Shown piece by piece: positions 6 through 37,520 of a DNA stretch of 64,000 nucleotides. The DNA comes from Tubulanus polymorphus. Lineage: Eukaryota > Animalia > Nemertea. A program made the position numbers and the translations under genes. Numbering within the stretch: the stretch's first letter is position 1; each line of letters opens with the position of its first letter. The stretch is from positions 11,668,962 to 11,732,961 of the forward strand of contig NC_134034.1 in assembly GCF_964204645.1 (NCBI RefSeq), given 5' to 3'. The notes under the pieces are model-generated. The model did not search any database and had not been told where the DNA came from. It saw only the letters and a program-made list of their open reading frames with translations.

Positions 6-640
6 ATGAGGAGAGAATCGCACAATGATAATGAAAAGTCCGAAAATGAAACTTCGAGATAGTAGTTTATTTCAACGTTTCGACTATATTTTAATAGTCA
101 TCGTCAAGAATAAATCATTATTCCTGAAGATGACTATTAGAATATAGTCGAAACGTTGAATAAACTACACTAGTTTAAGGAATACAGTATTCCTGAAGAT
201 GACTATTAGGATATAGTCGAAACGTTGAATAAACTACACTAGTTCAAGGAATACAGTATTCCTGAAGATGACTATTAGGATATAGTCGAAACGTTGAATA
301 AACTACACTAGCTCAAGGAATACAGTATTCCTGAAGATGACTATTAGGATATTGTCGAAACGTTGAATAAACTACACTAGCTCAAGGAATACAGTATTCC
401 TGAAGATGACTATTAGGATATAGTCGAAACGTTGAATAAACTACACTAGTTCAAGGAATACAGTATTCCTGAAGATGACTATTAGGATATAGTCGAAACG
501 TTGAATAAACTACACTAGCTCAAGGAATACAGTATTCCTGAAGATGACTATTAGGATATAGTCGAAACGTTGAAATAAACTACTATCTCGAAGTTTCATT
601 TTCGGACTTTTCATCATCATTGTGCGATTCTCTCCTCATC
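6..640. mobile_element. Foldback/inverted-repeat element enclosing the ribozyme array (probable inverted Penelope pLTR fragments)
   Basis: About 6-112 is the reverse complement of about 533-640. The left arm carries an antisense hammerhead copy with core TTGACGA. Confidence 0.7.
119..585 (+). ncRNA. Tandem array of 7 minimal type-I hammerhead ribozyme motifs (69-bp unit), Penelope-like
   Basis: Cores CTGAAGA start at 124,193,262,331,400,469,538 (period 69). Unit: stem I TATTC/GAATA, core CUGAAGA-U, stem II GACTAT-loop-ATAGTC, GAAA, 2-bp stem III AC/GU (palindromic ACGT), cleavage triplet GUU, then AATAAA. Confidence 0.8.
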
Positions 641-12200: not shown

Positions 12201-12876
12201 AGCCAATCTAACAACTCAAGACCAGTCTAAACTCATTCTGGTTCTATAACCAATCTAACAACCTAAGACCAGTCTGAGCTCATTCTGGTTCTATTATAGC
12301 CAATCTAACAACCTAAGACCAGTCTGAGCTCATTTTGGTTCTATCATAGCCAATCTAACAACCTAAGACCAGTCTGAGCTCATTTTGGTTTTATAGCCAA
12401 TCTATAAACAACTTAAGCTCATTTCGGTGTATAACCACAACACAAGCCTGTTAGTTTATACCTGATAGAAGAAAACATCTTTACGATCAGTGCCTTCAGT
12501 AGCGTATGATTCTAATATTCCCTCTGAAATTCAATAACAAATATCATCGTTTTTCTCAGTAACAACAACAAACATTATATTCTCAAAACACAATAAGCGT
12601 CTATTTGTGGAATATCGGGTTTAAAAACGTTCCGAATTGTCTCTTACCTGGATTGATGCCGTGTTCAGCGCAAAGCTGCTTCCAAAATTCCATTCCAACT
12701 AAACAAAAAAAAAAATAATCACACAACATCATTAATTAACAAGTGGAAATAATTAATTGAATTGAATTGCGGAAGAAAATGACGGAGAAAGTTTAGAGTG
12801 AAGAAAGTTTTTTTTTTTTAAACTGACTTTGATTTCCACATTGTCCCAGTTGAAGGGTGATGATTTCACGCGGCAT
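6240..12876 (-). CDS. TUBG1: Gamma-tubulin, complete, 10 exons, 452 aa
   Basis: Exons (-): 12828-12876, 12648-12698, 12462-12523, 11783-12019, 11038-11117, 10476-10602, 9571-9807, 8240-8392, 7507-7668, 6240-6440 = 1359 nt, in frame. Start [18 protein letters not shown]; motifs [11 protein letters not shown] and [10 protein letters not shown]; end [10 protein letters not shown]. PolyA signal on - strand at 4965-4970. Confidence 0.97.
6777..7485. repeat. 44-45-bp minisatellite (about 16 copies) in gamma-tubulin intron 9
   Basis: Unit tggttctctatagaaccgacagctagccagcagctgcagccagcc. Confidence 0.95.
7840..8292 (-). repeat. About 100-bp tandem repeat that duplicates the 3' end of gamma-tubulin exon 8 plus its donor site
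   Basis: GTCGATCCTACACAG|GTAAATATCAA recurs with exon ends at 8240 (true), 8137, 8040, 7936 and 7859. Confidence 0.9.
9170..9542. repeat. Degenerate about 20-bp tandem repeat (ctgtggaactggg)
   Basis: Repeated (c)tgtggaactgg motif; the same motif is used by arrays at 45100-45430 and 47020-47480. Confidence 0.8.
9973..10302. mobile_element. MITE family B with an internal 47-bp tandem expansion
   Basis: Ends GGGGCCGGTTGCACAGTC...GACTGTGCAACTGGG; unit agaccagtctacgaccaacttagttctatagccaatctaacaactta. Unexpanded copies at 39832-39970 and 43177-43311; related arrays at 12075-12420 and 24355-24510. Confidence 0.8.
11456..11737. mobile_element. piggyBac-like MITE, family A copy 3
   Basis: TTAA flanks at 11452-55 and 11738-41. 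Confidence 0.85.
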
Positions 12877-13459: not shown

Positions 13460-16400
13460 ATGGATCGTCTAAAATCGGTGAGTTCAACTTCGAACTCTTA
13501 AATCATAATTGAATTCTGACAGTTTTGTCTGAGGTAGGTCTTAAGCGTTGATGGAGGAGACAAACGAGAGTCGCTTCAACAGGTTTTCTGAACTTCGTTC
13601 CACCACAGGCACTTGAATATGGGCTTTGATAATGGATAAATATTTGATAATTTACCAGCGATACGTTAATCCTACTTTAATAGATCGCCATGTTTTATAA
13701 TAAATTTACCCATGATGCAACGCGCGCCAGTCGTTTAGCTATACTATACAGAAAGGCTGGAAACGATCCTATCTCCGTAATGCTTTAATCTACCCGCAGT
13801 TATCGGGACAGATGACGTCACAGCAATCCCGAAGAGGCATCGCGAATTTTCAAAAATCAATTTTGTTGCCATTTAAAATCTTTAATGGAGCTAAAACAGT
13901 GTCAATGTTTCCAAAAAAATCATCTACAATTGAAATTATGGGCGCTCCTATATTTCAGGATTAAAATTGACACTAAGGACGTACTTCGGCAATCATCGGC
14001 AGTGTTCGGCTGTCCCGATAACTGCGGGTAGATTTAAGCATTACGGAGATAGGATCGTTTCCAGCCTTTCTGTATAGTATAGCTAAACGACCGGCGCGCG
14101 TTGCATCATGGGTAAATTTATTATAAAACATGGCGATCTATTAAAGTAGGATTAACGTATCGCTGGTAAATTATCAAATATTTATCCATTATCAAAGCCC
14201 ATATTCAAGTGCCTGTGGTTCCACCTTGAATCATGAATGATAATAATCATAAGGGTTCACTTGTTAAATATTGATTGAAGAGAGATGTGTCTGCTGTGGC
14301 TTCCCTAATAAACTCCAGCCAAGTACTACTGCTAGTTAACTGCCCTGGGCCTGCTGTGGCACCTGGACCGTGGGCACTGACTGTGTTGTAATGTCTATTT
14401 ATTAATTGATGAGACCTGTTTTTCTTGGATATTTTGCTTACTTTTTGGGGTACATACCTCATTTATGTCTTAACAGAATGCCAAAAATCGCGGACAACAA
14501 CTGAATATCCGATATATTTCCAGATCTGTACAAATTAGATGGATTGGCAAAAAGACTCCTTAAGTCCAATTGAATGAGAGAGAAAATCCTCCATTTTGTC
14601 AAATTATTTAATTTTTTTCCATTGTCACCATGCCTACGAAATGAAGTTATTTTTCTTGTGGGGTCTCAACAACTAAATCAGGGTGGCGTAGGCATGGTAA
14701 CAATGTTCAAATCCAAGAAATTTGACAAAATGGAGGATTTTCTCTCTCATTCAACTGGACTTAAGGAGTCTTTTTGCCAATCCATCTAATTGGTACAGAA
14801 CTGGAAATATATCGGATATTCAGTTGTTGTCCGCGATTTTTGGCATTCTGTTAAGACATAAATGAGGTATGTACCCCAAAAAGTGAGCAAAATATCCAAG
14901 AAAAACAGGTCTCATCAATTAATAAATAGACATTAGTGTATCTCATTGCATGATGTGGTCATAGGTTTTTTAAATGTTTGACAAATGATGATTTTTTCCT
15001 CCTTTTTTCAGAAATTGAGCGAATATGAACTCGAACGTTTGGAAAATATTCGTGAAAATAAAGAATTGGTTCGTTGTCCATTATTCATATATTTATTGTG
15101 GTTCATAGTATTCACTTCTAGTCCTGATGTTGGTCTTTAATTGAATTGTGTATTTCGTTCTTATTTCTAGCTGTCGAGATTGATGGCTGATTTAGACACT
15201 TACGAGTTTAAACAAAGCGTAAGTTAATAGGAAAAAATTTTGAAACATTATTTCTTATTTTACTCTCACCACGTGCGGTTACAGCGTAGCTATAGGCGAT
15301 CGTCAAAATCTCCTACGGGTGATGGGTACATGTCTGGTCCTGCTAATCTTTAAAATCATGACTAGATATCTACTCATCGTCTGTGGGCTAGATAGTAGTT
15401 ACCACTGGACGAAATTCGAAACCATCATTCTAATGAGACCGTGGTGAAAATTGATGAATTTGGCCCCCACATTCTGATTTCTAGTTAAACGGGAGTAATT
15501 TCAAAGACTTCTTAAATGTGCCTTGAACTTTGATTTAAGCTAGAGACACCTTCATTTTTGAGATATGAAAAAATGCTTTATAGAAGATGTTTAGATTGGT
15601 ACAGTTGGGACCAGGATTTGTGTTTATCCCCGATCAGACAGTTACCAAATTAGAATTACAATTTAGTTGTGTAAGGATGAAAATTTGCTTACAAACCGTA
15701 CAGATTTTTTGGGAGCCTACGCCATTTGATTCATTGCAAAAAAAGTGATACCAACTCGCGGAAAATTTGAAGTTATCTCTTTGAAAACTTTTTATATCCA
15801 GAAATAACTGTAGGGAAACAGTTTTAAATCCCTTTGATTCTTCTACAGATGATGAAAGCGAAGCCGCAGAAAACTCAGAAACGTTCGAAGCGCGCGTCGT
15901 ACGAAGCAGACGGACGAACGGCGTCTGCTCGTGTCCGTCGTCTCGTCATGACCGACCGCAGTCCGCCGAGAACCCGGTCCCGTGCGAAGAATCCCGATTT
16001 AAACGGCGACCATAGCGACGATCAATCCGATGAGAAAACTGAAAACGTGCGTTTAGATCAAAATTTTGAAATTCGGATTACAGAAAACTTCGGTTGAATA
16101 ATTGGCGCACGTTGTATATTTTGAATTCTAGAGAATGGTGATTAAATTAGGATTTTTCGGTTCGACGAAGAGGAAATTCGATAGCGATGATGATAATTCG
16201 AATGATTCTTGGGACGGAGTGGTAAGTGGCCGTTATAAAGCTGTCGTCCTTAAAATTCCACACTTCACTCGACGCCAACATTTTTCAGCGAACAAAATTA
16301 CTCGATCAAATCAGAATTTATTTTGAATTCGTTAATTTATGGCTTAATAACAGGACTTTTTCTCTGGATTAAAGAACAAGTTTTGATGGTTTCCATAGAC

Positions 16401-18468
16401 AAGTGGCTGTCCAATATCAATAGTTGACAAAAACCCACGATAAAAAGAAAAACTATCTGATAGTTTGACGTTTCGACTCAAATCTATGAGCCATTTTCAA
16501 AAACTATTTTTTGAAAATGGCTCATAGATTTGAGTTGAAACGTCAAACTACCAGATAGTTTTTCTTTTTATTGTGGCTTTTTGTCAACTAACAAGTTTTC
16601 ACTTGAAACTGAGAAACTGTTGACTTGCTTCATCATATTCTTTCACAGTTTGATGCGATGATCTATTAATAAATGAACTCGTTTAATTGTAGAGTCCCCC
16701 GAAGCGAATTCGTGTCACGATCGAACGCGACTTTCGATCGGCAGACGACATCACTCAGGACGACCTCGACATGGTCGCAGACGTCGTATCGGTAAAAAAA
16801 TACGACCATATTCGCGTAAGTGTGCTAATTTAGAATTAGTTCATTTTCAATCAGTTAACTACGAGTCAAATCTTAACTCAAAACTGTGAAACTGAGTCCG
16901 TGGTATCCTCCTCAGGGAGTTGATCGTGTCCTTGGTATCCTCCTCAGGGAGTTGATCGTGTCCTTGGTATCCTCATCAGGGAGTTGATCGTGTCTTTGGT
17001 ATCCTCATCAGGGAGTTGATCATGTCCTTGGTATCCTCCTCAGGGAGTTGATCGTGTCCTTGGTAGCCTCCTCAGGGTGTTGATCATTTGAATTGATTTT
17101 GATTATTTCAGGGTACGACTTGTCATCAATGTCGACAGAAAACGTTCGATATGAAAACGATTTGCAGATCTCCGCAATGCGTCGGCGTCCGAGGCCAGGT
17201 ACGTGAGAGAGCGGAGAATTTTAAACTCGGTTATTGCGAGGAGAATTAAGCATTAGTAATGAATTTCAATGTGTTATTTTCAGTTTTGTGGAGTTTGTTT
17301 ACGCAATAGATACGGTGAAGATGCGAAGGAAGCGTTGAAGAATTCAGTGAGTATTTTCTGACAACTACTTGCATTCACTAAGACCTTTTTAGTGAAGTGC
17401 ATAGACTACTACATCTCAATCAATAGGGGCCAGGATTGCTGGCCAATTAGGCGGTTACCAAATTGAATAGAGGAATTTGCTTACAAAACCACCAAATTAA
17501 TGGTTTAGCGAGGTAAAACCTGAGGAGTCTACTCAAATTGAGGCATGCTAGTGATGTAGATGCTTTGTCAAAATTTGAAATTTTCTCCTTTAAATCTCAT
17601 TAAAAACTCCTTATATCCAGGAACGAGCGATCTGTAGAGACCCTGCGTTCATCTGAACTAACTTTTGAGTGGATTCTATTTTATTCGATAATGAACTCGC
17701 GAACTGTTGTGAAATCGACTAAATAGAATGAGTAATTATCGTGGTTTGTTTGTGTATTTATAAAAGGAATGGCATTGTCCGCCGTGTCGTGGTATTTGTA
17801 ACTGTTCGATCTGTCGTCGTCGAGCTGGTGTTTGTTGTACCGGTATCCTAGTGCCGTTGGCGCGTGAACGAGGATTCAAAGACGTCAACGCTTACTTACA
17901 AAGGTACCGATCTTCTATCGCATTGTCTCTCTCATTAGAATATTATTTGATCGGACTTAACTAAACTGGGTGGCCTCTGACCTTGGAAACTAAGGGAATC
18001 AGAAAATTCGAGAAGAATTCGGATAATGTTATTGACCACGCGTTTCTAATCTTTATCAATGAAAAATGAATGAATTATAACATTTTACGTCTAGAATATT
18101 CTCTGATTCACTGTAATCAAACCAGGGAAAACTTAAGGGATTCGTGAGCTGGGCGGAAAGTGGCGCCACCCTGCTCGAATCAAATTAAATCTAGGTGCCT
18201 AGATGTATCTTGCTTGGTATTGGCTGATAAGTATGCCAAGTATTCTATTGGTGCTGTTCTATGTATCAATTAGGTTTTCGTTAAAAAATGACCCTCGAAT
18301 TTGGTGATCATACCCTCAAAAGCCCCTCAAATTTCATATCGATGATTCTGTAGGAACCATGTATGTTGGAATTGATCAGATTTCTTCTCTTCTGACTGAT
18401 TGAATTGTGTATTTATTCAACAGACCCCAAATTAATAATTCTTTCATATTTTCAGTTTAAGAGGTTGA
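13460..18468 (+). CDS. CDCA7: CDCA7 (zf-4CXXC_R1 hemimethyl-CpG sensor, HELLS partner), 10 exons, 277 aa
   Basis: Exons 13460-13477, 15012-15068, 15171-15218, 15849-16046, 16132-16221, 16693-16815, 17112-17198, 17284-17346, 17767-17903, 18456-18468 = 834 nt. Zinc finger [11 protein letters not shown]...[24 protein letters not shown]...[18 protein letters not shown]...TGIL. N-terminal helix [19 protein letters not shown]. Exon 1 is the least certain. Confidence 0.93.
13604..14217. mobile_element. Non-autonomous DNA transposon with about 205-bp TIRs and 7-bp TSD (P-element-like termini)
   Basis: CACAGGCAC...GTGCCTGTG with near-perfect long TIRs; GTTCCAC duplicated at 13597-13603 and 14218-14224. 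Confidence 0.85.
14391..14933. mobile_element. Palindromic MITE family C (543 bp, TA TSD)
   Basis: ATGTCTATTTATTAATTGATGAGACC...GGTCTCATCAATTAATAAATAGACAT with arms of about 250 bp; near-identical inverted copy at 41475-42016. Confidence 0.9.
16421..16590. mobile_element. 170-bp hairpin carrying variant hammerhead motifs on both strands
   Basis: Near-perfect palindrome. The minus arm reads TTT-TTGAAAA-T-GGCTC-ATAGATTT-GAGTC-GAAA-C-GTC-AAA (U3-A8 core variant). Confidence 0.6.
16901..17086. repeat. 32-bp minisatellite (about 6 copies)
   Basis: Unit tggtatcctcctcagggagttgatcgtgtcct. Confidence 0.9.
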
Positions 18469-19492
18469 AAAATCCGGAGACTTTAGCGGCTATTGGTGGA
18501 TGATTAGTTACGGTTATTGATATTTTTGTCGTTAAGAGAATTGATCAATTATTGTTAAACGTTATACTCTCAAAAATGCACAAGCACGCAATTTGTATAG
18601 TTAGAGGCTATTCATGAAATACATAGACCGATAGTTTGGAAATATCCGGTATGAAATTACCAAAATCATCTGGACTCGGTATTCTAGGTTTGTAATAAGC
18701 GATGAATCGTTATAATGAGGTTCCACTGTCGTATTCTTTTAAACACAAGTCTTAGAACGCTGCATACAGAATGTGAATTAAAATTCCACTGTCTAAATCG
18801 AATAACATCGCAAATCACTGGGCCAAATTGATACGAGTTGAATGTACTTTAATGAATAGCCGTTTATTGCTTTTATGGTGATTAGTTTGATGCAAGCATT
18901 TATACTTAATTAATTAAACCTACCAGAACAATGCATTTCTTTATAGGTACTAGATTATATTGTATAGTTATGATTATAAGGGCTGGGAAGATTTTTGATC
19001 ATAGGTAGTGTCGCGATATACTCCTTACTGATGAAATGAAATAAATATTTGGAGGAGTGTATAACTACAGCATAATGTTCGAGCTGGGCTTTGACTAAAT
19101 ATGATATATATAATGAGGTCTTGCACCGTTTAAATCAAGTGATTTTGTTTTTAAAAAAAAGATTTTAAATATGGAACAAATTTTGATAATTATTCCATTC
19201 GGACTTCGATGATTTATTTTACTCGTGTGATTATTATGCCACTATATTTTTGTACTTACGATTTTAAAAATCAGATGAAATAAATAATAAATTGTTAACG
19301 CTTATTAGAAAAGTCAGTTTTGTCATTCCTTTGGGATATTGTCGCCACCCATCCCTGATCTCTTGATGTGGCGATCTCTGTAGTCTGAATTCCTACAACC
19401 CGTTGTTTGGGGAGGGAACAACGGCTACGTACTAGACTAGCATCTATGGGGCTTAACTCGGGAACGTGCCGTCGCACCCATTACTTTAATCG

Positions 19493-19697: not shown

Positions 19698-20578
19698 TGA
19701 CTATGACTACCATTACTTACTTAAGCCAGATCATCAAGTGCTTGACACAACTTAACTTGGCCCCTAATTAGTTCAGGCCTAATGGTACTGTCTCAGAAGG
19801 TCACCCAGTTCAGACAGACATTAGAAACATTTTCCCCAGGACACTGGCTACGATTCTGAATGAGGGAGTTACCAGTGCTTTTAGGCTAATAAAGTTTAAT
19901 TTGAATTTTTTAGCAAGCCCTTGCACGCGAGGTTAATCATTTTCGGTTTCGAAGATTGAGTCACGCGATATTACCTATTCAGTGGGGGCATTATCATTGA
20001 CTTCCGGGTTCGAAAATTGCGTAAGTGAAATTAACCTATTTCAGTTAATTTAGGTAATTAGGAGGGAACTAATTAGTGATTATTTGTGGATTTATGGAAG
20101 GCTATAGACGGGGAAGCAAACAGTCTGTCAGATTGTCACTGACAGTGACAAGCTGTCACTCTTCTGTCACTGACAGACTGTCAGTAGTGACAGTGACAAG
20201 TTCAAGTTGTCACTCTATCTAGACAGTCTGTCAGTGTTTTCTTTGCTTGTCGTTGTTGAAAAAGTAAATTTCTGCCATTTGTTGATAGCTTCACACCTCA
20301 CAAAAATCATCTCACTTGTGGCTATGGTGACCGACAGACGCACCCTCGGCTCAACAACCAGTTAACTGATCATGTCACTTTCTCTTGAAGCCGATGTTTT
20401 GCTTGAAAAATGTGATGACTGGTTAAGTCTAATGTCTATTTCAACTTGACTTGAGAGGACATCAGGTGGCCTAGCTCGCTCAGTTTTGATTGATGTCTAT
20501 TTCATCTTTGAATTTCACTTTCAGGTTTTTCAACTCACGTACAGATACTTCGGATAAAAGTCAATAAAGAGATGCGCG

Positions 20579-23500
20579 ATGGCTTCCTACATCAGCAACA
20601 TGCTGAAACGCCCGAAAAACCGGGAAGCAATCGCCGTAGTAACGAGATACCCGTCGCCGGGCTCGTGTAAAACGAAATTGATTCCTGCGATCGGCGGTCG
20701 AGGAGCGGCGAGAGCTCAGTTATTGATGGTCAGTTTATTTTAACTGGATTTACTTCGATTTAAGCAATCCACCCTGACAGCGGGAACAGGGTGGTGCCGA
20801 TAATCTGGAGAACTCAAGGAATCAGAAAAATCCCGAATGAATCCAGGCTAACTCGGGGAATTCGACAAATTTAACCAAAAACTTGAAAAAACTCAGGGAA
20901 TTTGGATAATGTTATTGACCACATGTTTCTTTATCAATACATGATTCAAAGAAAAATTAATGAATGCATTTTCAACCTGGAAATCTCTCTGGTTCACTCA
21001 GGGAAAATCGGATTTGTAAATAGGCAGAAAGTGGCGCCACCTTGAGGAAGTATCCTCACTTGCCGCAGTAGCTTACGATGTTCCCAACTAATTTCTGTTC
21101 TCATTTCAGACGGAACATCTTCTGTCGGAAGTCCAGACGGTGAAATTATCGAAACCCGATCTCCAAGTGTTCGTGTATTATTGCGGAGCGACCATTGATG
21201 ACATGCGATATTGGTTCGATCGTAAATACCCGGGATTATCGCCGATCTTTAAACAACAAACCGGGCTAAACCTCGGTGAAATCATCGCGAATATCTTCAA
21301 ACAGACTTTCGCAGCCGGCAATGAACGCACTATAGTCGTAGGTAACAACACCAAAAAACATTCGCTTTTCTGCTCTTCGTGTTTAGATTAGTTTTCATAT
21401 TGATAGTTGTTTTATGTCTCGGAAAACGAGATGATTTTAACCCCTTTTCTGGTTTCCATTTTCCCATGGTTTCAATATAAATAAAATGTTTTCGTAAAAA
21501 TTCTGCCGTACATGAAGCAGCTGTGGTTGTTTCGAATGAAGACCCTAACGATGACTCCTAGTGGATCCTCACTTGCCACTTGTGGAAACCTCTATCGCTA
21601 TACAGTAGTTGATATCCTACTGCACACTAGCGACACCTGGTGGATCCTCACTTGCCACTTGTGGAAACCTCTATCGCTATACAGTAGTTGATATCCTACT
21701 GCACACTAGCGACACCTGGTGGATCCTCACTTGCCACTTGTGGAAACCTCTATCGCTATACAGTAGTTGATATCCTACTGCACACTAGCGACACCTGGTG
21801 AATCCCTGCTTGCCATGAGCAGAATCCTCTATTGTTGCAGTAGTTGGTGTCCTACTGCACACTAGCGACGCCTGGTGGATGGTCGCTGTAGCGTTCAAGT
21901 TTCCCCATTTCTAATCTGTTGTTGTTTTTGTTTTTTCTTGCAACGTAGGTAGTGACATTCCTGGAGTTAATTATAACATTCTCGAAGATGCGTTGAGTTT
22001 GTTGAAATGGGATGAAAACGACGTTACGATCGGTAAAGCGCTTGACGGAGGCTACTATCTGATTGGTTTAAACCGCAGAACCAGCGCGTTGATTGGTCAG
22101 TTTAAATTTTAACTAGTCATTTTTCGAAAAGTTTGAATTGTTTAGCTGTAAATGGTAGAATGGGGGGCAGATCCAGATGCCAATTTAAACTTGCTTGTTA
22201 CATCCCAAAAAGGCACTTCGGTGTCCCAAAAGGCATTCTTAGGTATAGGCGTAATCCCACACTGATGGGCTAATTGTAAAGAATTTGTCAAGTTCCAAAG
22301 GGCACTTTGAGGTCCAAAAGGTAGTATTAAGTGCAGGCATACCCCTGCACTGAAATGCATGAATTATTGTTGTTGACAAAATTATCAAAAGGGCGCTAAA
22401 AAATTTGATGAACTTTGTACACAAGCTCATAAGTCTCCCTGGATCGGGCCCTGTGAGTGATTGTTGAGTCTCCCTGGATCGAGCCCTGTGAGTGATTGTT
22501 GAGTCTCCCTGGATCGGGCTCTGTGAGTGATTGTTGAGTCTCCCTGGATCGAGCCCTGTGAGTGATTGTTGAGTCTCCCTGGATCGAGCCCTGTGAGTGA
22601 TTGTTGAGTCTCCCTGGATCGGGCCCTGTGAGTGATTGTTGAGTCTCCCTGGATCGGGCTCTGTGAGTGATTGTTGAGTCTCCCTGGATCGAGCCCTGTG
22701 AGTGATTGTTGAGTCTCCCTGGATCGGGCCCTGTGAGTGATTGTTGAGTCTCCCTGGATCGGGCCCTGTGAGTGATTGTTGAGTCTCCCTGGATCGGGCC
22801 CTGTGAGTGATTGTTGAGTCTCCCTGGATCGGGCCCAGTGAGTGATTGTTGAGTCTCCCTGGATCGGGCCCTGTGAGTGATTGTTAAGTCTCCCTGGATC
22901 GGGCCCTGTGAGTGATTGTTGAGTCTCCCTGGATCGAGCCCTGTGAGTGATTGTTGAGTCTTCCTGGATCGGGCCCAGTGAGTGATTGTTGAGTCTCCCT
23001 GGATCGAGCCCTGTGAGTGATTGTTGAGTCTCCCTGGATCGGGCCCTGTGAGTGATTGTTGAGTCTCCCTGGATCGGGCCCTGTGAGTGATTGTTGAGTC
23101 TCCCTGGATCGGGCCCTGTGAGTGATTGTTGAGTCTCCCTGGATCGGGCCCAGTGAGTGATTGTTGAGTCTCCCTGGATCGGGCCCTGTGAGTGATTGTT
23201 AAGTCTCCCTGGATCGAGCCCTGTGAGTGATTGTTGAGTCTCCCTGGATCGAGCCCTGTGAGTGATTGTTGAGTCTCCCTGGATCGGGCCCTGTGAGTGA
23301 TTGTTGAGTCCCCCTGGATCGGGCTCTGTGAGTGATTGTTGAGTCTCCCTGGATCGAGCCCTGTGAGTGATTGTTGAGTCCCCCTGGATCGGGCTCTGTG
23401 AGTGATTGTTGAGTCTCCCTGGATCGAGCCCTGTGAGTGATTGTTGAGTCATCCTGGATCGGGCCCTGTGAGTGATTGTTGAGTCTCCCTGGATCGGGCT

Positions 23501-26500
23501 TTGTGAGTGATTGTTGAGTCTCCCTGGATCGGGCCCTGTGAGTGATTGTTGAGTCTCCCTGGATCGGGCCCTGTGAGTGATTGTTGAGTCTCCCTGGATC
23601 GGGCCCTGTGAGTGATTGTTGAGTCTCCCTGGATCGAGCCCTGTGAGTGATTGTTGAGTCTTCCTGGATCGGGCCCTGTGAGTGATTGTTAAGTCTCCCT
23701 GGATCGGGCCCTATGAGTGATTGTTAAGTCTCCCTGGATCGGGCCCTGTGAGTGATTGTTGAGTCTCCCTGGATCGGGCCCTGTGAGTGATTGTTGAGTC
23801 TTCCTGGATCGGGCCCTGTGAGTGATTGTTGATTTTCTCTGCTGTAGAACCGTTGTTCATGAAGGGGATAGAGTGGGGAACGGAACGCGTTTACACTCAA
23901 CAGATCGAAGCCGCCGAATTCCTCTCGTTGAAAGTCGCCACTTTAGAACAGCAACTTTCAGACGTGGTAATTATTCACTAACGACTGAGAAATCATTACG
24001 AGATTCTGAGTTTGATATTGTTTCATACCTCAGGATCCAGTTCCAAAGTTCCGGGGCTGTGTTGCACAGACACGACCAGTCTAAAAGTACCCGCCAGTCT
24101 TAAATCTAGAGAACAGTGACTGCAATTAACTGATATCTATCTATCTCAGTGTAGAGTTAACAAATAAAAACCCACAGTTAGATCTATAAAAACAGTTTAT
24201 TTTCCTTACAGTTTCGAGGCTTTAATTAAACCTCATCAGAGGAACAAGTGTTTTTTGTTCCTCTGATGATGAGGCTTAGTTGAAGCCTCAAAACTGTAAG
24301 GAAAATAAACTCTTTTAACAGATCTAACTTAGGGTTTTTATTTGTTAGCTGAAGAATGGTCTTTAAGTTCTTAGATTGGTTATAGAACCAAAGTGAGCTT
24401 AGACTGGTCTTTAAGTTGTTAGATTGGTTATAGAACCAAAGTGAGCTTAGACTGGTCTTTAAGTTGTTAGATTGGTTATAGAACTAAGATTGTCTTTAGA
24501 CTGGTCTTTAGAATGTAAGCCATGACTGTGCAACAGACCCTGCGGATTATTACGACCTGATCTGTGAATCGTGTTCTAACTGTCGAACTGTGGTCCGTCG
24601 TGTCGTTTTGCAGGATGTCGCTGATGATTTGAGAGTTTTAGAGGATTGTTTATCGGTAACGACGGATGAATTAGTCAATCCTCAGTGGTCGATTATAATT
24701 CCTGTGTTCAACGAAGAAGACGTCATCGCCGAAACTCTGGATACGCTCTTTCAGGTATTTCGCAATACGTTCTTCTAAAACGATCGACCGACCCGTAAAT
24801 TATTGATGCTTTAAGTTGAGCGTATTCATTGAGATTTTCCTAACTGATACGCAGTTAACTCTCCATCTTGTGTGAAGATTATGAATTCGCTGATCAGAGC
24901 AAGTGGTCAGATTGATCAAAAGCGATGAAAATGTGTGTAAAAATTTGAGAAATTTCATATGAAGACATATGATCAGTAACCGCTTGCGTTATTGTGCCTT
25001 GCTCATCGAAAAAAATCGAAAAATCCTGGGGCTGATTTTACAGACTGGTATTACCTTTTACTCGGGGGCTTGCTCAACTCATTTTCAATTGAGTTAGCCC
25101 CTGGTTTAAGGGTAATACCGGTCTATAAAACCGGGCCCTCGTATTATGTTGTTAACAAATGTGAATAAAGCTGATGAGAAGATGTGAGATCATCAATCTG
25201 AGTCTCGCAGTCAATTATAAAAAGGTAGTTCATCTTCGTCTGAATTCATGGTCAGCGTTGGTATCTATTGTCAGCAACGCTGTCTTGATTTTGTTCCACC
25301 CTAGCCACCCCTCTCCCTCCCCGCCCTTCTCTCCCTCCCCCACCTCTCTCTATTTTCACCCCTCTCACTTCCTGCCCCTCTCTCTCCCTGCCCCTCTCCC
25401 TCCCTGCCCCTCTCCCTCCCTGCCCTTCTCACCCTCCCCACCTCTCTCACTCCCTGCCCCTCTCTTTCCCTGCCCCTCTCCCTCCCCGCCCTGCTCTCCT
25501 TCCCCGCCTCTCTCACTCCCTGCCCCTCTCTTTCCCTGCCCCTCTCTCCCTGCCCCTCTCACTCCCTGCCCCTCTCTCCCTGCCCCTCTTTTTCCCTGCC
25601 CCTCTCTCTCCCTGCTGCTCTCCCCCTGTTTTCAGTGTATGATTTTGTTGATTGTTAGAATATCGATGGCAGTAACAGTATAGAAGTGATAGTAGCAGAC
25701 GGAGGAAGCACGGACTCGACGATCGATAAAGTGAAACAAGTGATGAGTAATCATCCGGAAGCTAAATTCTCGCTCATGGAAACGAAAGCTTGTAAGTATT
25801 TTTCATACCGGTATCGTAGAGATGTGGAGACAGATAGCACGGCGGTCAATAATCGGTCTAACTCTCGTCTTGAAAATATGAACCGGTCTTATTACCTCAG
25901 AAAGATCATTTCATGTTTGTGCGAGTTAGTGAAAAGTCTGAGTTGGCTATGTCCGAGTAATTTTCATCGGAGTTGGCTATGTCTGAATAAGGCAAGACAT
26001 TAGCAGGATTAGCAATCTTCTTATGCGTCTCAGTAGTTTTTCTCGTGCTGAGAACTTTAAACGTTATGTGTGTGTGTTTGTAGGTCGAGGTCACCAGCAG
26101 AAGATCGGAGCAGATGGCGCTACCGGTGATATTCTACTGTTTTTGCACGCTGATACGCTGTTACCGCCGAACTATAACACGCTGGCCAGCGATTGTCTGT
26201 GGACGCCGGGCAACGTCGCCGGAGCATTTCAATTCAGTGTTTCGAAAACTGAGTGAGTTTTGAAAATATCCGGGAATCAAAAGGACTAGGGGTCCAGGGA
26301 CACCGTGCCCACTTGGGAAAAAATTTCTATATTCCATGCCCCCTGGTGAACATATACTAAACCAATGACCTGGAAACTCACCACAATCATAGAAAATATC
26401 ATGAGCTACAATATGCAATGGATTGTGGTAACAAAATATGTATAGGTATCAATATAAATAGACACATAGTATATGACTCCAATATTTAACTGCCCCTGGC

Positions 26501-28340
26501 GGCAAGAGCAATAAATTTGGTGATCCCAGATTCCTTGTGAGGAGATGTATCCTATCACTCTGCTAATTGATAATCAAATATAAAGTCTATAAGTTAAAAC
26601 ATGTTGATTTTCCACCTACGACTGAGGACTGATGACACTAAGATGGCCGGCAATTACGTGATATTTGACTGATCACAAAACCCATCTCACTTGCTGAAGA
26701 TCCCTTCTTGCCATTTTCTGATTTCAGATCATCTACCAAGTTCCAAGATTTTCAAATAAAAATGTTAGAATGGGGAACGAATTGCAGATCAAAGTATGTC
26801 GGTATGTGTTATCAGATTATCTTCTTCCTGAGACTTTCCGAGTCTGACTGACTTCTTCCTGAGACTTTCCGAGTCTGACTGACTTCTTCCTGAGACTTTC
26901 TGAGTCTGACTGATGTCTTCCTGAGACTTTCTGAGTCTGACTGACTTCTTCCTGAGACTTTCTGAGTCTGACTGACTTCTTCCTGAGACTTTCTGAGTCT
27001 GACTGACTTCTTCCTGAGACTTTCCCAGTCTGACTGACTTCTTCCTGAGACTTTTTGAGTCTGACTGACTTCTTCCTGAGACTTTCTGAGCCTGACTGAG
27101 ACTATTGGACTGATATTGTTTCCGTTCTATACATGTTACTGCTAATTTTTTTTAGAATTACCGTATGGAGATCAAGCTCTGTTCATCCGTAGATGTTATT
27201 ACGATAAAATCGGAGGAATCCCCGACCATCGGCTGTTCGAGGATTTTGTTATGGTGAGTTTATTGCAAACGTCGGAACAAACGAGCAAAAGAAATACGGG
27301 GTGGCGCCACTTACCTGGAGATCGGGGAACAGTCAGGGAATATTCTTTTCTTTTAAAAAGTCGGGGAATTTTGTAACAAAGGACTCGAAGTTAGGGAAAT
27401 TTGCTGAGAAAGTTAGATTGCATGTAAAATCATTGCGAGTAAAATCAAACGGTCTCTGTCTATGTCTTACATGATGTTGATTGATTGAATTCTTAGCAGA
27501 TCAAGTCAGGGAAAAGTCAGGGAATAGTCTGATCAAAAGTGGCTGACCTGAGAAAAGAATGATTTTAACATTTAACTGAATTCGTCCTGGCCTGCACCTC
27601 CCCTCTTCAGCAGCCTCAAAAACTCAGATTCAATGGATTTTGATTTTAGGTAGAAGCGGCAAAGAGAATCGGTCACATTGGAATAGTAGCTGCACCGTGT
27701 CAGACTTCCGCTCGTAGATATCAACGCAATGGCTTTTGGCGGGTGAGAATTTCTAATAAATGGCAATATGCTCGGTCTACTGTACAAAAAACCGCATTTC
27801 TTTGTGAATTTGGTCGTCAATGAGCAAAACTAACAGTCGATGAGGGATCATTTATTTATTCTGACATTTTTAAAGTTTTGATATTGGTAGAATTTTAATT
27901 TCATCGCGATTTATTTTCAGAACACATGTTTAAACAGCGCGATGATCGCGGCCTATAAATTCGGATATCACCCGAACGATATCGCTAACTGGTACTACGG
28001 GAAACCACCGACGGACACAGATCATCGCGAACTCGGCGAAGACAAATCCTCATCAGCAGACGATGACAGTCGTGGCGAGGAGGAGAGAGAGGAGACGACC
28101 GGTAGTCAGGTGACGGTAGACGCATCGACTCCAGATAGCCGGGTAGGGGAAGCAGACGTCAGCCGGGGTGGGCAAATTGATGTCAGCCGGGGAGGGGAAG
28201 CAGACGTTAGCCGGGTTGGGGAAACAGATGTCGTCCAGGGAGGGGAAGCAGACGTTAGCCGGGGTGGGGAAACAGATGTCGTCCAGGGAGGGGAAACAGA
28301 CGTCAGCCGTGTAGGGGAAGCAGACGTCACTTCCAATTAA
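20579..28340 (+). CDS. Fused TIGR04282/DUF2064-like transferase + TIGR04283-like GT2 glycosyltransferase (families linked in bacteria to arsenosugar biosynthesis), 11 exons, 591 aa
   Basis: Exons 20579-20728, 21110-21341, 21949-22095, 23848-23966, 24614-24754, 25659-25791, 26084-26252, 26728-26801, 27156-27253, 27650-27742, 27921-28340 = 1776 nt, GT-AG, frame-consistent. N-domain motifs: TRYPSPGSCKTKLIPAIGGRGAA, QQTGLNLG, VVGSDIP, IGKALDGGYYLIGL, LFMKGIEWGTERV, LSDVDVADDL. C-domain motifs: SIIIPVFNEE, EVIVADGGSTDST, ATGDILLFLHADTLLP, AGAF, LPYGDQALFIRR, GGIP..LFED, TSARRY, YKFGYHP..IANWY. Confidence 0.88.
21555..21880. repeat. 79-bp tandem repeat (about 4 copies) with a CTCF-like motif
   Basis: ggatcc at 21563, 21642, 21721. 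GCGACACCTGGTGG is the reverse complement of CCACCAGGTGTCGC. Confidence 0.85.
22432..23832. repeat. 35-bp minisatellite (about 40 copies) filling much of intron 3 of the transferase gene
   Basis: Unit gagtctccctggatcgggccctgtgagtgattgtt. Confidence 0.97.
24156..24349. mobile_element. Hairpin with degenerate hammerhead motifs on both arms, nested in a family B MITE (about 24054-24540)
   Basis: Plus arm 24260-24301: CCT-CTGATGA-T-GAGGCTT-agttg-AAGCCTC-AAAA-CT-GTA-AGG (G12 mutated). The minus arm keeps GAAA but has a small deletion after the core. Confidence 0.6.
25297..25632. repeat. Polypyrimidine low-complexity tract (G-rich on the - strand)
   Basis: Repeated ccctgcccctctc motifs just upstream of the exon 6 acceptor. 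Confidence 0.9.
26821..27098. repeat. 31-bp minisatellite (about 9 copies)
   Basis: Unit cttcttcctgagactttcYgagtctgactga. Confidence 0.92.
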
Positions 28341-29191
28341 TCTATTATTGTACTTAAACTAGAATTTCAAAAGATTGATCAGATTTGTTACCTGGGTCCG
28401 CAGACCCCTCATTGATTACCGACAAAATATATTTCAACTCGTAAACGATCACATTTTCCAAGCAATTGATCAAATGAAAAGGATGATTAATCAAGAGTTC
28501 AATGTAAAATGATACGAAGTGTTCACATGAAGAATTGGCATGGAATCAATTAACGGTACTAGTTTCAATTTCTCTTCTGCGATCAAATGTTGTGAAGATT
28601 GTTTGTTAGATGTAAATAGATGCATTCAGCAATATCTCGTCGATTTGAATACGGCCCCCCATCATGTTCAGCGGGAGTTTACGATATGCGCGTGGCATTT
28701 GCAATTCGCTGAACGTTTGATATCTAAAAATCTATTCCACAACAATTTCATGGCTTATCATTCGTAGTTCCCGACGTCCAATCTCGGTTGTGATTAACCT
28801 GCATTTTGTGGCCATCAAACCGCTCAAGATAATTACACCACTCAATAATTAGTTCAAAACTACAGCTTTTCTATACGTATGTTTGTATGTTTGTATGTGT
28901 GTTTTTTGTGCCATAAGGATTTTTGCTTGCAATTCGTCAAAGCTTTCCTTTTCACTCTACCGTGTATATCTGCCAACTATAGACTTATCGACCTACCATA
29001 GGCTTGTATGCCGACTTGTCTGCCTACTGGTACATTTCTGTTCGTACCTCGCTCAAAATTATGAAAAATACCCTTCGAATATTGAACTTGTTTCGACTAG
29101 TTTTACGTAAATGACAATAAACCCTGGCTCCTTGGGTTCCATGATGTAGCCTATTATGTATGTTCGCGTAGAAGGCAAGTCTCTGGAGCAA

Positions 29192-30760: not shown

Positions 30761-33429
30761 GGCTCCTACTAAAAGCCGACCAGCGCCGACCAGCGCCGAC
30801 CAGCGCCGACCAGCGCCGACCAGCGCCGACCAGCTATCAAAAGCGCCGACCAGATACGCTTACCAAAACGGATAACAAATTCTTAAATTGAAATAATAAC
30901 TTTTATTTTTATCTTTTTACTTTTATCTATTTAACACGATTAACTCGATTGATCGTTTAAACTAGTGTGTCGGCATCAAAAGTCAAAAACAAGATACTTA
31001 GAGCTACAATACATTTGCAAAGAAATACTTATTTAACTTTTTTCATTGAATTAAATAACAGAAATATACCAATATACAAATTTACATGTTAACAATTTAC
31101 ATTCAGGCTTATATTCACTATATTTCTCAGATCTGAAATTTACAACGGTTGATAGTCTGATAGTTTGAACTTTGTCATCAAAAACATGTTGAGCTACAAT
31201 AGCAATACTTTAACTTTTTCAGTGAATTATTAATTACAAAAATATATACAAATTTACAAGTTTACAATTTACATTAGGACTATTTCACTATTATAGTGAA
31301 ATAGTCCTAAAATTATACACGTTAACACATATCACTGATATTTCTATTAACCTAACCTTAATTTTCGACTTTTTGAATTTTCCGATTCGCCGTTCTTTCA
31401 CTTTTTACGCGTTTCCTCTGACCTGGTTTTTTTGCAATATTTCCGGTTTTAGGAATAGTCAGCAGACCATCTGTTGATGTCATTGTATTAATTGGTTTTG
31501 TTGGCCTTATCGTGGCTTTCATGAATTTCTCAAATAGTTTTTTTTTTATCGTTTTCAGTTTTTTGAGTCCAAATGGCATGGCTGACAGTATAGCTTTTTA
31601 ATTTTGATACGATTTCGAAGTTTCCTTGGTTGTGAATAGCTCTGCGAATATCGATATATTGTAGTTTCACCATTTTATGTAATTCCTCGATTAAGTCCGG
31701 AATCTTTAATATCTTCCATTTGGTTGAAAGTTTTATGATACTGTTAATTGTCTCGCAATTGTTGTTGGTCCAACCGATTGAATGGACCTTTTTCACGACT
31801 GACGGAAAGAACACATACTGCTTTAGTCGCGGTTCCAGTTTGTTGAAATAGGCTATAAACTCTGGTGCTGATTCCATTATGTCTGCCTTTGTTTCAATCA
31901 TTTTTTGTTCGTATTTGAATTCGTCATCCTGATGCAGCGCTCTACTTTTACCGAATATCGCATCGACTATTCTATCTTTAACTTTATCGTTGACACCAGT
32001 TTTGTGCAACAAATGTCTTTTTACATTTTCGATAAGATGCCGGTAACACAATATTTGATTAGCGGAGGGGAATGCCTCTTTTACCGCCTTAAGCAACGCT
32101 TTTTCTTCATCAGAACCGAAAGTCAGAGATTCACTGTAGGCGATTTCAGTCGTTGTGACTTCCGAGTCAAGCTTCCCTTTGATGTGTGCGAAGAAATGCT
32201 GATAGGTTTCGGTTTCCCCGTCCCAATGTAAAAACAGAGGGCCGATGAATATCGGGTGTTCCTGAGTTTCCCGGCGAAGTAAATGTGTATTCTTAAAAAC
32301 GGTAATTGTCAAAAAACACGCACCAACGTTAAATGTCCTGTCAACACCAAGGATAGATCCAGACTGTACACAGAATGTACGAATGTCTTTAATTTGTTGG
32401 TCTGTATATAGAATAGCCATTGGTGGTTTTCCTTTCAATGCGAACACTTCTCGTACAAAATCGTTTTCATGAAGCATATTAAAGAGTTGTTGAATGTCAT
32501 CGGCGACATTTTTCCTAGTCAATTAGTCAATGGAATTGATATATTTATAAGTTTATTTTATGTCCATTAATCTTAAAGTCAATTGGTCAACGGGTCATTG
32601 TTTTAACAGATCAAAAGAATTACTCAATTGGTTTTTGATGACAAGCCCAGTAAAATTCAAACGGTTTAAGTAATTATATCTTAAAGTTGCGTGTGTCGAA
32701 TGATTGCACACATCTAATTAGTGGATGATCACAGTTATTTTATTCCTTTCATCAGTAATTCCTTTCTTTTATTTAATTGAGAAGTGCGTTCTTGACTTCA
32801 GTTCACATGCTACTTCCCCTGGACCAATGATCAAAGCTGTTATGAACGTCCTTATTAATTTTAGCGCGTGTACGTGACGAGAGTAGTCTTGCGTAAAAAT
32901 CTATTAGGCAAATATCATACGAGATGTATGATATACACATAAACATACATGAAAAAGAAAGAAAGATTTTAAGTTGTTTGCATTTTCTTTTATTTCAAAT
33001 AACGATAGTATATGAAATCCCAGTCATATTTAATGCAAGCTTAACATGAAAAAATAAACCTGATCAATATACCAATTTCAATTTAATTTTGCCATATGAA
33101 ATTATAAATCTAAAAGTACATCAGACAGCAGAATACATTTTAACGAATATTGTCTTGGACATGAAAACTCAGTAAAAAATTAACACGAACACAATGCAAT
33201 CCAAGTAAATATAACCATTTGAATCTAATTTTGCATGTAGTCATAGGTAAGACAGCAGCATACATTTTTAACGAATTGTCTAGGAAATCGGGGCTTGGAC
33301 GGCGCCGGTCGGCGCTTGGACGGCGCTGGTCGGCGCTTGGACGGCGCTGGTCGGCGCTAGTGGGCGCTGGTCGGCGCTGGTCGGCGCTAGTGGGCGCTGG
33401 TCGGCGCTGGTCGGCTTTTAGTAGGAGCG
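30761..33429 (-). mobile_element. Mutator-like (MULE) DNA transposon, 2.67 kb, with tandem-repeat TIRs
   Basis: TIR GCTCCTACTAAAAGCCGACCAGCGCC at both ends with subterminal (CCGACCAGCG)n; 8-bp TSD GTTGTCGG at 30753-60 and 33430-37. Confidence 0.92.
31358..32522 (-). pseudogene. MULE transposase, N-terminally incomplete, frameshift near 31540
   Basis: DDE motifs GVDRTFN, GSDEEKAL and TNNNCETIN, plus CYRH (CxxH). The C-terminus continues in another frame (KKPGQRKR) across a poly-T run. Confidence 0.85.
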
Positions 33430-35963: not shown

Positions 35964-37520
35964 TTAGTTGGATTCCTTTTTGACACATGTTTCTTGTACA
36001 TGAATCTCATTTTCGATTTCCTGCAAACTCGATGGTGTACTATCGTTTTGACTAAAGGTACCGTATTCGTTTTTTAGAGATCCACCCGCTTTTTCGAATA
36101 ATTTAATACGTTCAGTATAAACGTTTCCGTCGCAAGCGATCCAAATAATCCCACCTAAACAAACGATATAGATTGCTGCTTCAATGACAAACGCCATTCC
36201 CGGGAATATCTGGAAAGTTACGGAGTATAGATTTGTGAAGATGATTGCCCCTAGTAGATTCGAGGCCGTCTCGCCACTCGAAAGCAAAGAGAATATTTTA
36301 CCAATTTCATCTTCATCAACCAACTTACTAATGATTGATTTTGAACCGGATACAATCATACCGCTGACTGAACCGACTATTACTCCAACAAAAATCATCC
36401 ATGTTTGGTCGCTGACTGATACGAAAACTAACCGGGAAGTTTTGAAAACTATACCGATGATAACTAAATTCACATCTTGAATCCTAAATATAACCGATAA
36501 TAGTGGTAAGAGCAAACACAAAGCTAACCCTAGACTTGCGTAATCGACGGCTAACAAGTAACCGTACAATGATTTGGACCAACTCAACGGGTAATATCTC
36601 ACAAAAAGTAAAGTTACATCGATTTCTCCAGCTTTACAAATCTGATTCGCGATAACTACGAAAAAAACGACAACAAGGTGAAATCGCGAATGCCCCTGTC
36701 TCGGTTTGATAAGTACTTCCACCGAATCGCGAATGTTAACCGGGTTGAATAAGAATGGTTTACCGTTCTTCTTCGTCGGTTCTATTTCGGGATAAATGTC
36801 GTTAGATTCGATTCCGGGCACACTTTCCTTCAAAAACATAAGCAGTACTATTACGCACGCGGCCAATATAGCCATAACGATGAGGAAAATGAAGTTAAAA
36901 CTGAGTCTATCCAGAAGTGAACCGGCCAACAATGACCCGAGAAAAAGTCCGAAAAAATTCATCGCCAAAAGTTTACTCAGTTTTTTGGTTCGGTTTTCCT
37001 TACTGCTCACATCCGAAACGTAGCTGTATACAGCCATACTAAGTACAGCGCTTTTTCCAAAACAGCCATTGATGGCCGCTCCGATTAAAACAAATGCAAG
37101 AGCGGACGATTGAGGTAGCATGCCAAACATATAAAACAAGCACGCAATGATGGCGCCTACGCAAGGAAGAATCATCAGCAACTTTCTTCCAACTATGTCG
37201 CTCCAAGCTCCGCAAAATAATCCAAGAACAATCGCTGGAAAATTTAGCAAAATCTTATAATACATTATGTAATATGCCGAGAGTATTTGGACGTGGGTCT
37301 CTTCAGTCGGGTGTTTGCGTAAACTATAACATAAGCCATGATCCTGATACTCGATTAAACATACTTCTTGATAAATGAGTAACTTGACAGTTGGTTCTAA
37401 CAGTGACTCAGCCGATTTGTACATTAAAAACACCATTTCGGCAACGATTGCACCACTTTTTATGCACTCCATCGACGAACAAGGAAAGCACGATTTAGGC
37501 CTACTGTCCTTGGCGCCCAT
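35964..37520 (-). CDS. SLC46/PCFT-like MFS transporter, intronless CDS, 518 aa
   Basis: Single ORF with about 12 hydrophobic segments. Motifs GAWSDIVGRK (MFS motif A), YSYVSDVS...RT, FLKES, SIISKLVDEDEIGKIFS, and a Cys pair in loop 1, all typical of SLC46. Confidence 0.88.
   Translation of the reverse strand: MGAKDSRPKSCFPCSSMECIKSGAIVAEMVFLMYKSAESLLEPTVKLLIYQEVCLIEYQDHGLCYSLRKHPTEETHVQILSAYYIMYYKILLNFPAIVLGLFCGAWSDIVGRKLLMILPCVGAIIACLFYMFGMLPQSSALAFVLIGAAINGCFGKSAVLSMAVYSYVSDVSSKENRTKKLSKLLAMNFFGLFLGSLLAGSLLDRLSFNFIFLIVMAILAACVIVLLMFLKESVPGIESNDIYPEIEPTKKNGKPFLFNPVNIRDSVEVLIKPRQGHSRFHLVVVFFVVIANQICKAGEIDVTLLFVRYYPLSWSKSLYGYLLAVDYASLGLALCLLLPLLSVIFRIQDVNLVIIGIVFKTSRLVFVSVSDQTWMIFVGVIVGSVSGMIVSGSKSIISKLVDEDEIGKIFSLLSSGETASNLLGAIIFTNLYSVTFQIFPGMAFVIEAAIYIVCLGGIIWIACDGNVYTERIKLFEKAGGSLKNEYGTFSQNDSTPSSLQEIENEIHVQETCVKKESN

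What the first reader, a model, noticed from the sequence alone, without database searches (positions are those of the whole stretch)
20579..28340. Spliced animal gene fusing both bacterial arsenosugar-associated transferases (TIGR04282 + TIGR04283)
Seen: 11 GT-AG exons join into an uninterrupted 591-aa ORF that the ORF track shows only as fragments. The N-terminal half carries the DUF2064/TIGR04282 motif set (TRYP.PG..KT.LIP, GSD.P, DGGYYLIG, I.WGT..V, L.DVD...DL). The C-terminal half carries the TIGR04283/GT2-like-a set (SIIIP..NE, DGGS.D.T, LLFLHADT.LP, LPYGDQ.LF, ED, TSARR). The junction lies inside one exon (24614-24754), so the fusion is not an artefact of my exon joining. Established: in bacteria these two families are partners of the radical-SAM enzyme ArsS and the methyltransferase ArsM in gene clusters assigned to arsenosugar biosynthesis, and marine animals are generally assumed to get arsenosugars from diet. 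Inference: this animal may encode part of an endogenous arsenosugar or arsenolipid (or related) tailoring pathway. Ten introns and ordinary animal neighbours argue against contamination and for long residence (old HGT or patchy retention).
Basis: partly seen in the sequence, partly recalled or inferred. Interest (0 to 1): 0.9.

Follow-up and report, generated by a model that had tools for sequence, protein, structure and literature searches.

The report
Ancient animal arsenic-sugar enzyme pair gene
This ribbon worm has an intact, spliced gene joining two enzymes that bacteria often keep beside their arsenic-sugar genes; sponges, molluscs, sea urchins, lancelets and a single-celled relative of animals have it too, so sea animals may build or rework arsenic sugars themselves, though this is untested.

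Summary
Observation confirmed. Eleven GT-AG exons encode 591 aa, identical to Tubulanus polymorphus LOC141912113 ('uncharacterized'). It passes both curated cut-offs (TIGR04282 138.8/134; TIGR04283 195.9/182). One run, probably RNA, shows all seven introns tested, including both flanking the fusion exon.

The fusion is not an animal invention and not nemertean-specific. It is common in bacteria, next to arsM-arsS in some. Orthologues occur in Spiralia, Ambulacraria, amphioxus, the sponge Amphimedon and the choanoflagellate Acanthoeca. They form one clade (100/100), and all ten introns correspond to sponge introns (eight exactly), so the gene predates animals.

The N half has a CofC/FbiD nucleotidyltransferase fold and the C half an inverting GT2 fold. 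Best model (inferred): activate a ribose phosphate as an NDP-sugar, then transfer it to a glycerol or lipid acceptor, the uncharacterised late step of arsenosugar synthesis.

Arsenic as substrate is unproven. The family names rest on gene neighbourhood, ArsS lies near only 10 of 82 bacterial loci, and stand-alone TIGR04282 also sits in cyanobacterial hps glycan loci. I could not test for an animal ArsS. No paper on the animal family was found; no earlier scan note in this genome mentions arsenic.

The parts
20579..20728 (+). Exon 1 coding part (Met1-Met50; RYP-PG--KTKL nucleotide-binding loop). An in-frame stop at 20555 and an acceptor-like AG ending at 20524 suggest a spliced 5' UTR (inferred).
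21110..21341 (+). Exon 2 (TIGR04282 profile 35-102)
21949..22095 (+). Exon 3 (GSDIP, DGGYYLIG; DUF2064)
23848..23966 (+). Exon 4 (WGT; first Asp of DVD); donor at 23967 shown by a read joint
24614..24754 (+). Exon 5: end of TIGR04282 domain, linker, start of TIGR04283 domain (the fusion junction)
25659..25791 (+). Exon 6 (DGGS)
26084..26252 (+). Exon 7 (HADT, the DxD-equivalent)
26728..26801 (+). Exon 8
27156..27253 (+). Exon 9 (LPYGDQ; ED with the presumed catalytic base D418)
27650..27742 (+). Exon 10 (TSARR)
27921..28340 (+). Exon 11: end of GT2 domain, lineage-specific acidic tail, stop; transcript runs on past 28600
20630..24631 (+). Span encoding the TIGR04282/DUF2064 domain (residues 18-222), CofC/FbiD-like nucleotidyltransferase fold
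24689..27995 (+). Span encoding the TIGR04283 GT2 domain (residues 242-477)
28137..28329 (+). Coding 24/48-nt tandem repeat in the acidic tail; one 48-nt unit is missing in the X4 contig

Best explanation
An intact, expressed two-domain enzyme gene inherited vertically from before the origin of animals, ultimately of bacterial type (well supported). Most likely mechanism (inferred, not shown): 'activate, then transfer'. The N domain, CofC/FbiD-like, uses an NTP to convert a phosphorylated ribose into an NDP-sugar. The substrate is most plausibly 5-dimethylarsinoyl-ribose-1-phosphate, released from the ArsS product DDMAA by a nucleoside phosphorylase. The C domain, an inverting GT2, transfers the sugar to a glycerol, glycerophosphate or phosphatidylglycerol hydroxyl, giving the beta-riboside of arsenosugars and arsenosugar phospholipids. 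Most animal orthologues carry an N-terminal hydrophobic anchor followed by basic residues, which fits a cytosol-facing membrane enzyme with a lipid acceptor; the nemertean and brachiopod proteins lack it. Whether the arsenic precursor comes from the animal's own ArsS, from food or from symbionts is open.
For: Both curated NCBIfam cut-offs met. Family-invariant or near-invariant residues are kept in both domains: R23, K31, G128/D130/P132, D160, D215/D217/D221; D277, H329/D331, G393/D394, E417/D418. AlphaFold model pLDDT 95.6. N half nearest to 3CGX (same family, Z 26.2), then guanylyltransferases 7P97 (Z 20.0), 2I5E (19.8), 6BWG (17.5) and IspD (16.2); C half nearest to WrtF, TarS, TarP, SpsA (Z 20-22). 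Some orthologues also hit TIGR03552 CofC. The bacterial fusion lies in arsM-arsS clusters in Planctomycetota (L016, L040). ArsS makes DDMAA (PMC13598754) and acts with ArsM in the initial steps (PMC8552651); products are beta-D-ribofuranosides (PMC10456119). Alpha-1-phosphate, nucleotidylation and inverting transfer give beta (my knowledge of CofC, phosphorylase and GT2 chemistry). Tree, introns and anchors.
Against: No enzymology found for either family; the names rest on neighbourhood (the primary ArsS paper could not be read). ArsS lies within about 8-10 kb of only 10 of 82 bacterial loci and 3 of 23 fusions (a lower bound, many contigs are short). Stand-alone TIGR04282 sits beside hpsJ-like genes in 6 Nostocales loci. 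No ArsS or ArsM near the gene in any eukaryote locus held. The worm protein has K for the otherwise conserved R33 (112 of 116 have R). A shared fold shows no substrate.
Confidence: 0.45

Rival explanations
1. Same activate-and-transfer chemistry on a non-arsenic substrate, such as a 5'-methylthio- or 5'-deoxyribose from SAM turnover, or an NDP-glycerol or polyol unit for a glycolipid or glycan. Arsenosugars would be a side product or a bacterial specialisation.
For: Kept for the whole history of animals, also in a freshwater mussel (Potamilus). Most bacterial homologues have no ArsS nearby. TIGR04282 lies alone in hormogonium-polysaccharide loci. No arsenic partner near the eukaryote genes.
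Against: Direct arsM-arsS-fusion clusters exist in the closest architecture class. All named eukaryote carriers but one are marine, where arsenosugars are abundant. Adjacency to hps genes may be positional only.
Confidence: 0.35
2. The animal enzyme reworks or breaks down dietary arsenoribosides (aglycone exchange, re-lipidation, or the reverse reaction as detoxification) rather than building them.
For: Arsenosugars reach invertebrates through the food chain (PMC10456119). Carriers include many filter feeders, grazers and deposit feeders. No ArsS seen beside the gene. GT and nucleotidyltransferase reactions are reversible (own knowledge).
Against: Both domains are intact and fused as in the presumed biosynthetic bacterial form; simple breakdown would need only a hydrolase.
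Confidence: 0.15
3. Contamination, a recent horizontal transfer into this worm, or an artefact of exon joining.
For: The two families are otherwise annotated almost only in bacteria.
Against: Spliced contigs across the junction; public model identical; gene tree recovers Nemertea, Spiralia, Mollusca in part and Ambulacraria; intron positions shared with a sponge; gamma-tubulin-like, CDCA7-like and MFS neighbours.
Confidence: 0.01

Closest known systems
Bacterial TIGR04282+TIGR04283 fusion ('rSAM/selenodomain-associated transferase 1/2'; NCBI 'arsenosugar biosynthesis glycosyltransferase') of Cyanobacteriota, Desulfobacterota, Planctomycetota, Myxococcota
   Same: Same two domains in the same order, 35-40% identity over the full catalytic length, same invariant residues.
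   Different: Ten spliceosomal introns; a separate eukaryote clade; N-terminal membrane anchor in most animals (absent in this worm); acidic repeat tail in this worm; no arsM/arsS cluster around it.
PDB 3CGX, Desulfovibrio 'putative nucleotide-diphospho-sugar transferase' (DUF2064)
   Same: Same family as the N half (E 1.5e-53; Z 26.2, rmsd 2.3 over 211 residues).
   Different: Stand-alone domain; its title calls the function putative.
CofC/FbiD phospho-acid guanylyltransferases (7P97, 2I5E, 6BWG; TIGR03552)
   Same: Nearest characterised fold of the N half (Z 17.5-20), weak HMM hits in orthologues.
   Different: About 15% identity, far below the TIGR03552 cut-off; F420 pathway context absent. 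It may work like CofC but is not a member.
Inverting GT2 enzymes WrtF, TarS/TarP, SpsA; DPM1
   Same: GT-A fold of the C half (Z 20-22).
   Different: 10-19% identity; HMM scores of other GT2 families at most 37 bits against 196 for TIGR04283. The 'DPM1' label on amphioxus copies looks like a misannotation.
RefSeq 'uncharacterized protein' orthologues of marine invertebrates (Lineus LOC135490645, Lingula LOC106159171, Branchiostoma LOC118415510, Amphimedon LOC100636312) and Acanthoeca EP00035 P032954
   Same: Orthologous, same architecture, shared introns.
   Different: They are database entries without a described function; I found no paper on them.

Membership tests
TIGR04282 (DUF2064) | Curated HMM score of at least 134 over the full model | tested here: met
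   138.8 bits, profile 1-189 of 189
TIGR04283 | Curated HMM score of at least 182 over the full model | tested here: met
   195.9 bits, profile 2-221 of 221
TIGR04282/TIGR04283 | Conserved active-site motifs intact | tested here: met
   All family-invariant positions checked are kept; R33K, P157K and W445Y depart from near-invariant columns
CofC/FbiD guanylyltransferase (TIGR03552) | HMM cut-off 105 | tested here: not met
   No hit for P0001 at E 0.001; orthologues reach 20-39 bits. Fold similarity only.
DPM1 or other named GT2 families | Best family score and cut-off | tested here: not met
   All other GT2 models score at most 36.6 bits, far below their cut-offs
Arsenosugar pathway (ArsM + ArsS + transferases) | arsS and arsM clustered with the gene | tested here: not met
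   No tblastn hit of ArsS or ArsM in the 64-kb window or in the amphioxus, urchin, sponge and protist loci; clustering is not expected in animals
Arsenosugar pathway (ArsM + ArsS + transferases) | ArsS (TIGR04167) encoded anywhere in the animal genome | not testable with these tools
   No animal genome search is offered; protein searches list only the best 120, and the atlas returned bacterial clusters only
Arsenosugar pathway (ArsM + ArsS + transferases) | Enzyme activity on a dimethylarsinoyl-ribose substrate; arsenosugar formed in vivo | not testable with these tools
   Needs an assay; no such data found for any family member
Ancestral (vertically inherited) animal gene | One animal clade with a species-like tree and shared intron positions | tested here: met
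   Animals 98/96, animals plus choanoflagellate-containing protists 100/100; each half alone 99 and 97; 8 of 10 introns identical to the sponge in column and phase

The most novel reading that the evidence does not exclude
Many marine invertebrates inherited a complete arsenosugar/arsenolipid pathway from their single-celled ancestors (AS3MT, an unrecognised animal ArsS, a phosphorylase and this fusion), so part of the organoarsenic in shellfish is made by the animals themselves and not only taken up from algae.
Probability: 0.2. Interest if true: 0.9.

Novelty: new variant of a known kind. Interest (0 to 1): 0.62.

Why it matters
Arsenosugars and arsenolipids in sea animals are described as passed up the food chain from algae (PMC10456119), and the step from DDMAA to the finished riboside has only been proposed, in what I could read. 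An enzyme pair of that presumed step, conserved since before animals and present in oysters, mussels, clams, abalone, urchins and lancelets, gives one protein with which to test both questions. If it acts on arsenic, it changes the account of where seafood organoarsenic comes from. If not, it points to an unknown small-molecule or glycolipid pathway of marine animals and to a misleading family name.

Tried and rejected
Exons were searched one by one by reference and joined only inside scripts to check the reading frame. Full-length work used the database record P0001, which the exon-7 search returned and which matches exon for exon.

Rejected: exon-4 donor at 23964 (reads show 23967); contamination; recent or nemertean-specific transfer; an animal-made fusion; DPM1 identity.

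Led nowhere: looking for a eukaryote or animal ArsS through the atlas (bacterial clusters only), viral contigs (one fragment), flanks of animal and protist genes and earlier scan notes (no note holds the words arsenic, arsenosugar, ArsS or radical). The single-sequence fold of the N half failed (pLDDT 38) and was not used. The bacterial donor lineage is unresolved. Xue et al. 2019 is not held. A search for arsenosugars in vent bivalves found no paper.

Absence from cnidarians, arthropods, nematodes, tunicates and vertebrates is only 'not seen in the top 120'. The word-limited search also missed known members of its own alignment, so losses are not proven.
Full report
Observation. The region reads as an 11-exon gene on the + strand. 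All ten introns are GT-AG and the frame is open to the stop at 28338-28340. Searched one by one, exons 1-4 match TIGR04282 and exons 5, 6, 7, 9 and 10 match TIGR04283, each in profile order; Pfam gives DUF2064 and Glycos_transf_2. Four public runs hold the stretch. Laid on 23840-28600, run X4 has contigs that skip introns 4 to 10 at the modelled ends with depth 225-430, including both introns around the junction exon; X1-X3 cover introns and show none of these joints. X4's library is not on record, so calling it RNA is inference, and all four runs come from one study.

Method note. The exon-7 search returned a 591-aa database protein, P0001, which contains every exon translation in order and is Tubulanus polymorphus LOC141912113, 'uncharacterized'. 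Full-length work used that record. It passes both curated cut-offs, TIGR04283 195.9/182 and TIGR04282 138.8/134; other GT2 families reach at most 37 bits. Neighbours are ordinary animal genes: a tubulin (gamma-type by my reading), a zf-4CXXC_R1/CDCA7-like gene, a MULE transposase and an MFS transporter.

Distribution. Full-length orthologues with the same fusion occur in Lineus, Lingula, Owenia, oysters, Mytilus, Mya, Ruditapes, Pinctada, Solemya, Potamilus, Patella, Haliotis, Liolophura, Ptychodera, Saccoglossus, Glandiceps, Lytechinus, Amphiura, two crinoids and Branchiostoma, the last with paralogues. One hit clusters with the sponge Amphimedon XP_003383021.1, and another is from the choanoflagellate Acanthoeca spectabilis. 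Below these come bacterial fusions at 35-40% identity. Among 82 bacterial loci, 23 carry the fusion in the same order, across Cyanobacteriota, Desulfobacterota, Planctomycetota, Myxococcota and others. The fusion is therefore not an animal invention. No cnidarian, ecdysozoan, tunicate or vertebrate appeared, but the search is lossy, so these losses are suggested only.

Origin. In the careful tree of both halves (53 rows), animals form one clade (98/96) with Nemertea 98/98, Spiralia 95/98, Ambulacraria 100/99 and Hemichordata 100/99. Animals plus Acanthoeca and three environmental sequences form a clade at 100/100; the bacterial sister is unresolved. The sponge groups with amphioxus (98/89) rather than at the base, which does not match the species tree. 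Each half alone also gives the eukaryote clade (99 and 97). The root is not inferred, so transfer from bacteria to an early choanozoan or holozoan is inference from the far wider bacterial spread. Introns are the stronger evidence: worm, sea urchin and sponge each have ten, amphioxus nine. Eight worm introns match the sponge in column and phase. Intron 7 has the same phase inside a variable-length loop, and intron 2 is shifted by 4 nt in the worm only. The gene and its exon structure were thus present in the last common ancestor of sponges and bilaterians.

Anatomy. The alignment-based model is confident (pLDDT 95.6, pTM 0.93). The N half matches 3CGX, a family member with only a putative function. 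Its nearest characterised relatives are nucleotidyltransferases: 3-phosphoglycerate guanylyltransferase 7P97 (Z 20.0, rmsd 2.5, 191 aligned), 2I5E (19.8), FbiD 6BWG (17.5) and IspD (16.2). The C half is nearest to WrtF, TarS, TarP and SpsA (Z 20-22). Conserved acidic and basic residues of both sites are kept. Of 12 coding differences seen in the runs, 9 are silent and 2 are Asp-to-Glu in the tail; this is a small sample but fits a working gene. Most animal orthologues and the P0236 lineage have an N-terminal hydrophobic stretch (17-residue mean hydropathy 1.5-3.0) followed by basic residues; Tubulanus, Lineus, Lingula, Acanthoeca and the two bacteria checked do not.

Mechanism. Shown: two intact GT-A-fold domains, one nucleotidyltransferase-like and one GT2. 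From the literature: ArsM and ArsS perform the initial steps (PMC8552651), ArsS forms DDMAA (PMC13598754), the products are beta-ribofuranosides of glycerol, phosphate and lipid aglycones, and later steps are given only as proposals (PMC10456119). Inferred, from my knowledge of these enzyme classes: phosphorolysis of DDMAA gives an alpha-ribose-1-phosphate; the N domain makes the NDP-sugar; the inverting C domain delivers the beta-riboside to a glycerol or phosphatidylglycerol hydroxyl. An alternative division of labour, in which the N domain activates the three-carbon partner as CofC does, is not excluded. I put 0.45 on an arsenoriboside-building role.

Limits of the arsenic link. ArsS lies within the fetched flanks of 10 of 82 bacterial loci and 3 of 23 fusions, with clear arsM-arsS-fusion clusters in L016 and L040. 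In Nostocales a stand-alone TIGR04282 gene sits among hormogonium-polysaccharide genes, between hpsE and hpsJ in L081. No ArsS or ArsM is near the gene in any eukaryote locus held, and I could not search animal genomes for ArsS. A non-arsenic substrate (0.35) and reworking of dietary arsenicals (0.15) remain real rivals.

Novelty. The families and the bacterial fusion are known, and the animal proteins exist as unnamed database entries. The library held three papers naming the TIGR ids; the two listed are not about animals, and none names DUF2064. Most subscription journals are not covered. What appears undescribed is a eukaryote branch older than animals, usually membrane-anchored and widely kept in marine invertebrates. 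I rate it a new variant of a known kind, interest 0.62: well supported as a gene family and a testable lead on arsenic metabolism, but unproven as a pathway.

Noticed in passing
window 21342-21948 (intron 2): Intron 2 is shifted 4 nt (phase 0 to phase 1) against amphioxus, sea urchin and sponge, with GTAG at both junctions: a likely case of intron sliding.
   Followed up: partly
window 28137-28329: Coding tandem repeat in the acidic tail; the X4 contig lacks one 48-nt unit, an in-frame length polymorphism.
   Followed up: partly
window 22432-23832 and 21553-21880: A 40-copy 35-bp satellite in intron 3 and a 79-bp repeat in intron 2; these produce the spurious 341-aa ORF on the minus strand.
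   Followed up: no
window about 7400-12660 (-) and 13460-18500 (+): A tubulin gene (gamma-type by my reading) head to head with a CDCA7-like zf-4CXXC_R1 gene, directly upstream of the finding.
   Followed up: partly
window 31530-32522 (-) and 35964-37520 (-): A MULE/Mutator transposase ORF and an intronless 518-aa MFS transporter (SLC46-like by my reading).
   Followed up: partly
window 119-583: Seven-copy 69-bp tandem array; earlier notes s1-500364 and s1-500205 call it a hammerhead ribozyme array. Not checked here.
   Followed up: no
window 47701-48468 (+) and 62506-63861 (-): A proline-rich WIP/verprolin-like exon and a mucin-like Thr/Pro repeat ORF; no Pfam hit.
   Followed up: no
L081:6355-9763, also L051, L061, L070, L071, L073: Stand-alone TIGR04282 gene inside the Nostocales hormogonium polysaccharide (hps) locus, next to an hpsJ-like gene.
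   Followed up: partly
L085:117-1739 (P0236, P0366): Intronless, 70% GC marine-metagenome gene with strongly animal-like inserts and an N-terminal anchor; an unidentified protist lineage inside the eukaryote clade.
   Followed up: partly
L088:10001-11119 and L089:811-1341: Environmental, probably eukaryotic contigs with only the TIGR04283 half, grouping with the eukaryote clade in the C-half tree.
   Followed up: partly
P0172, P0175, P0399 (bacterial): Longer bacterial fusions add an NTP_transf_3-annotated region (about 680 aa) or an FAD oxidoreductase (about 830 aa).
   Followed up: no
L011:5757-7869: A Thermogutta fusion is preceded by an ArsM-like gene and a different radical SAM enzyme (weak Rv1681-family hit) in place of ArsS.
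   Followed up: no
P0007: A Lineus-like second copy in which several motif residues of both domains are changed; possibly a diverged paralogue.
   Followed up: no
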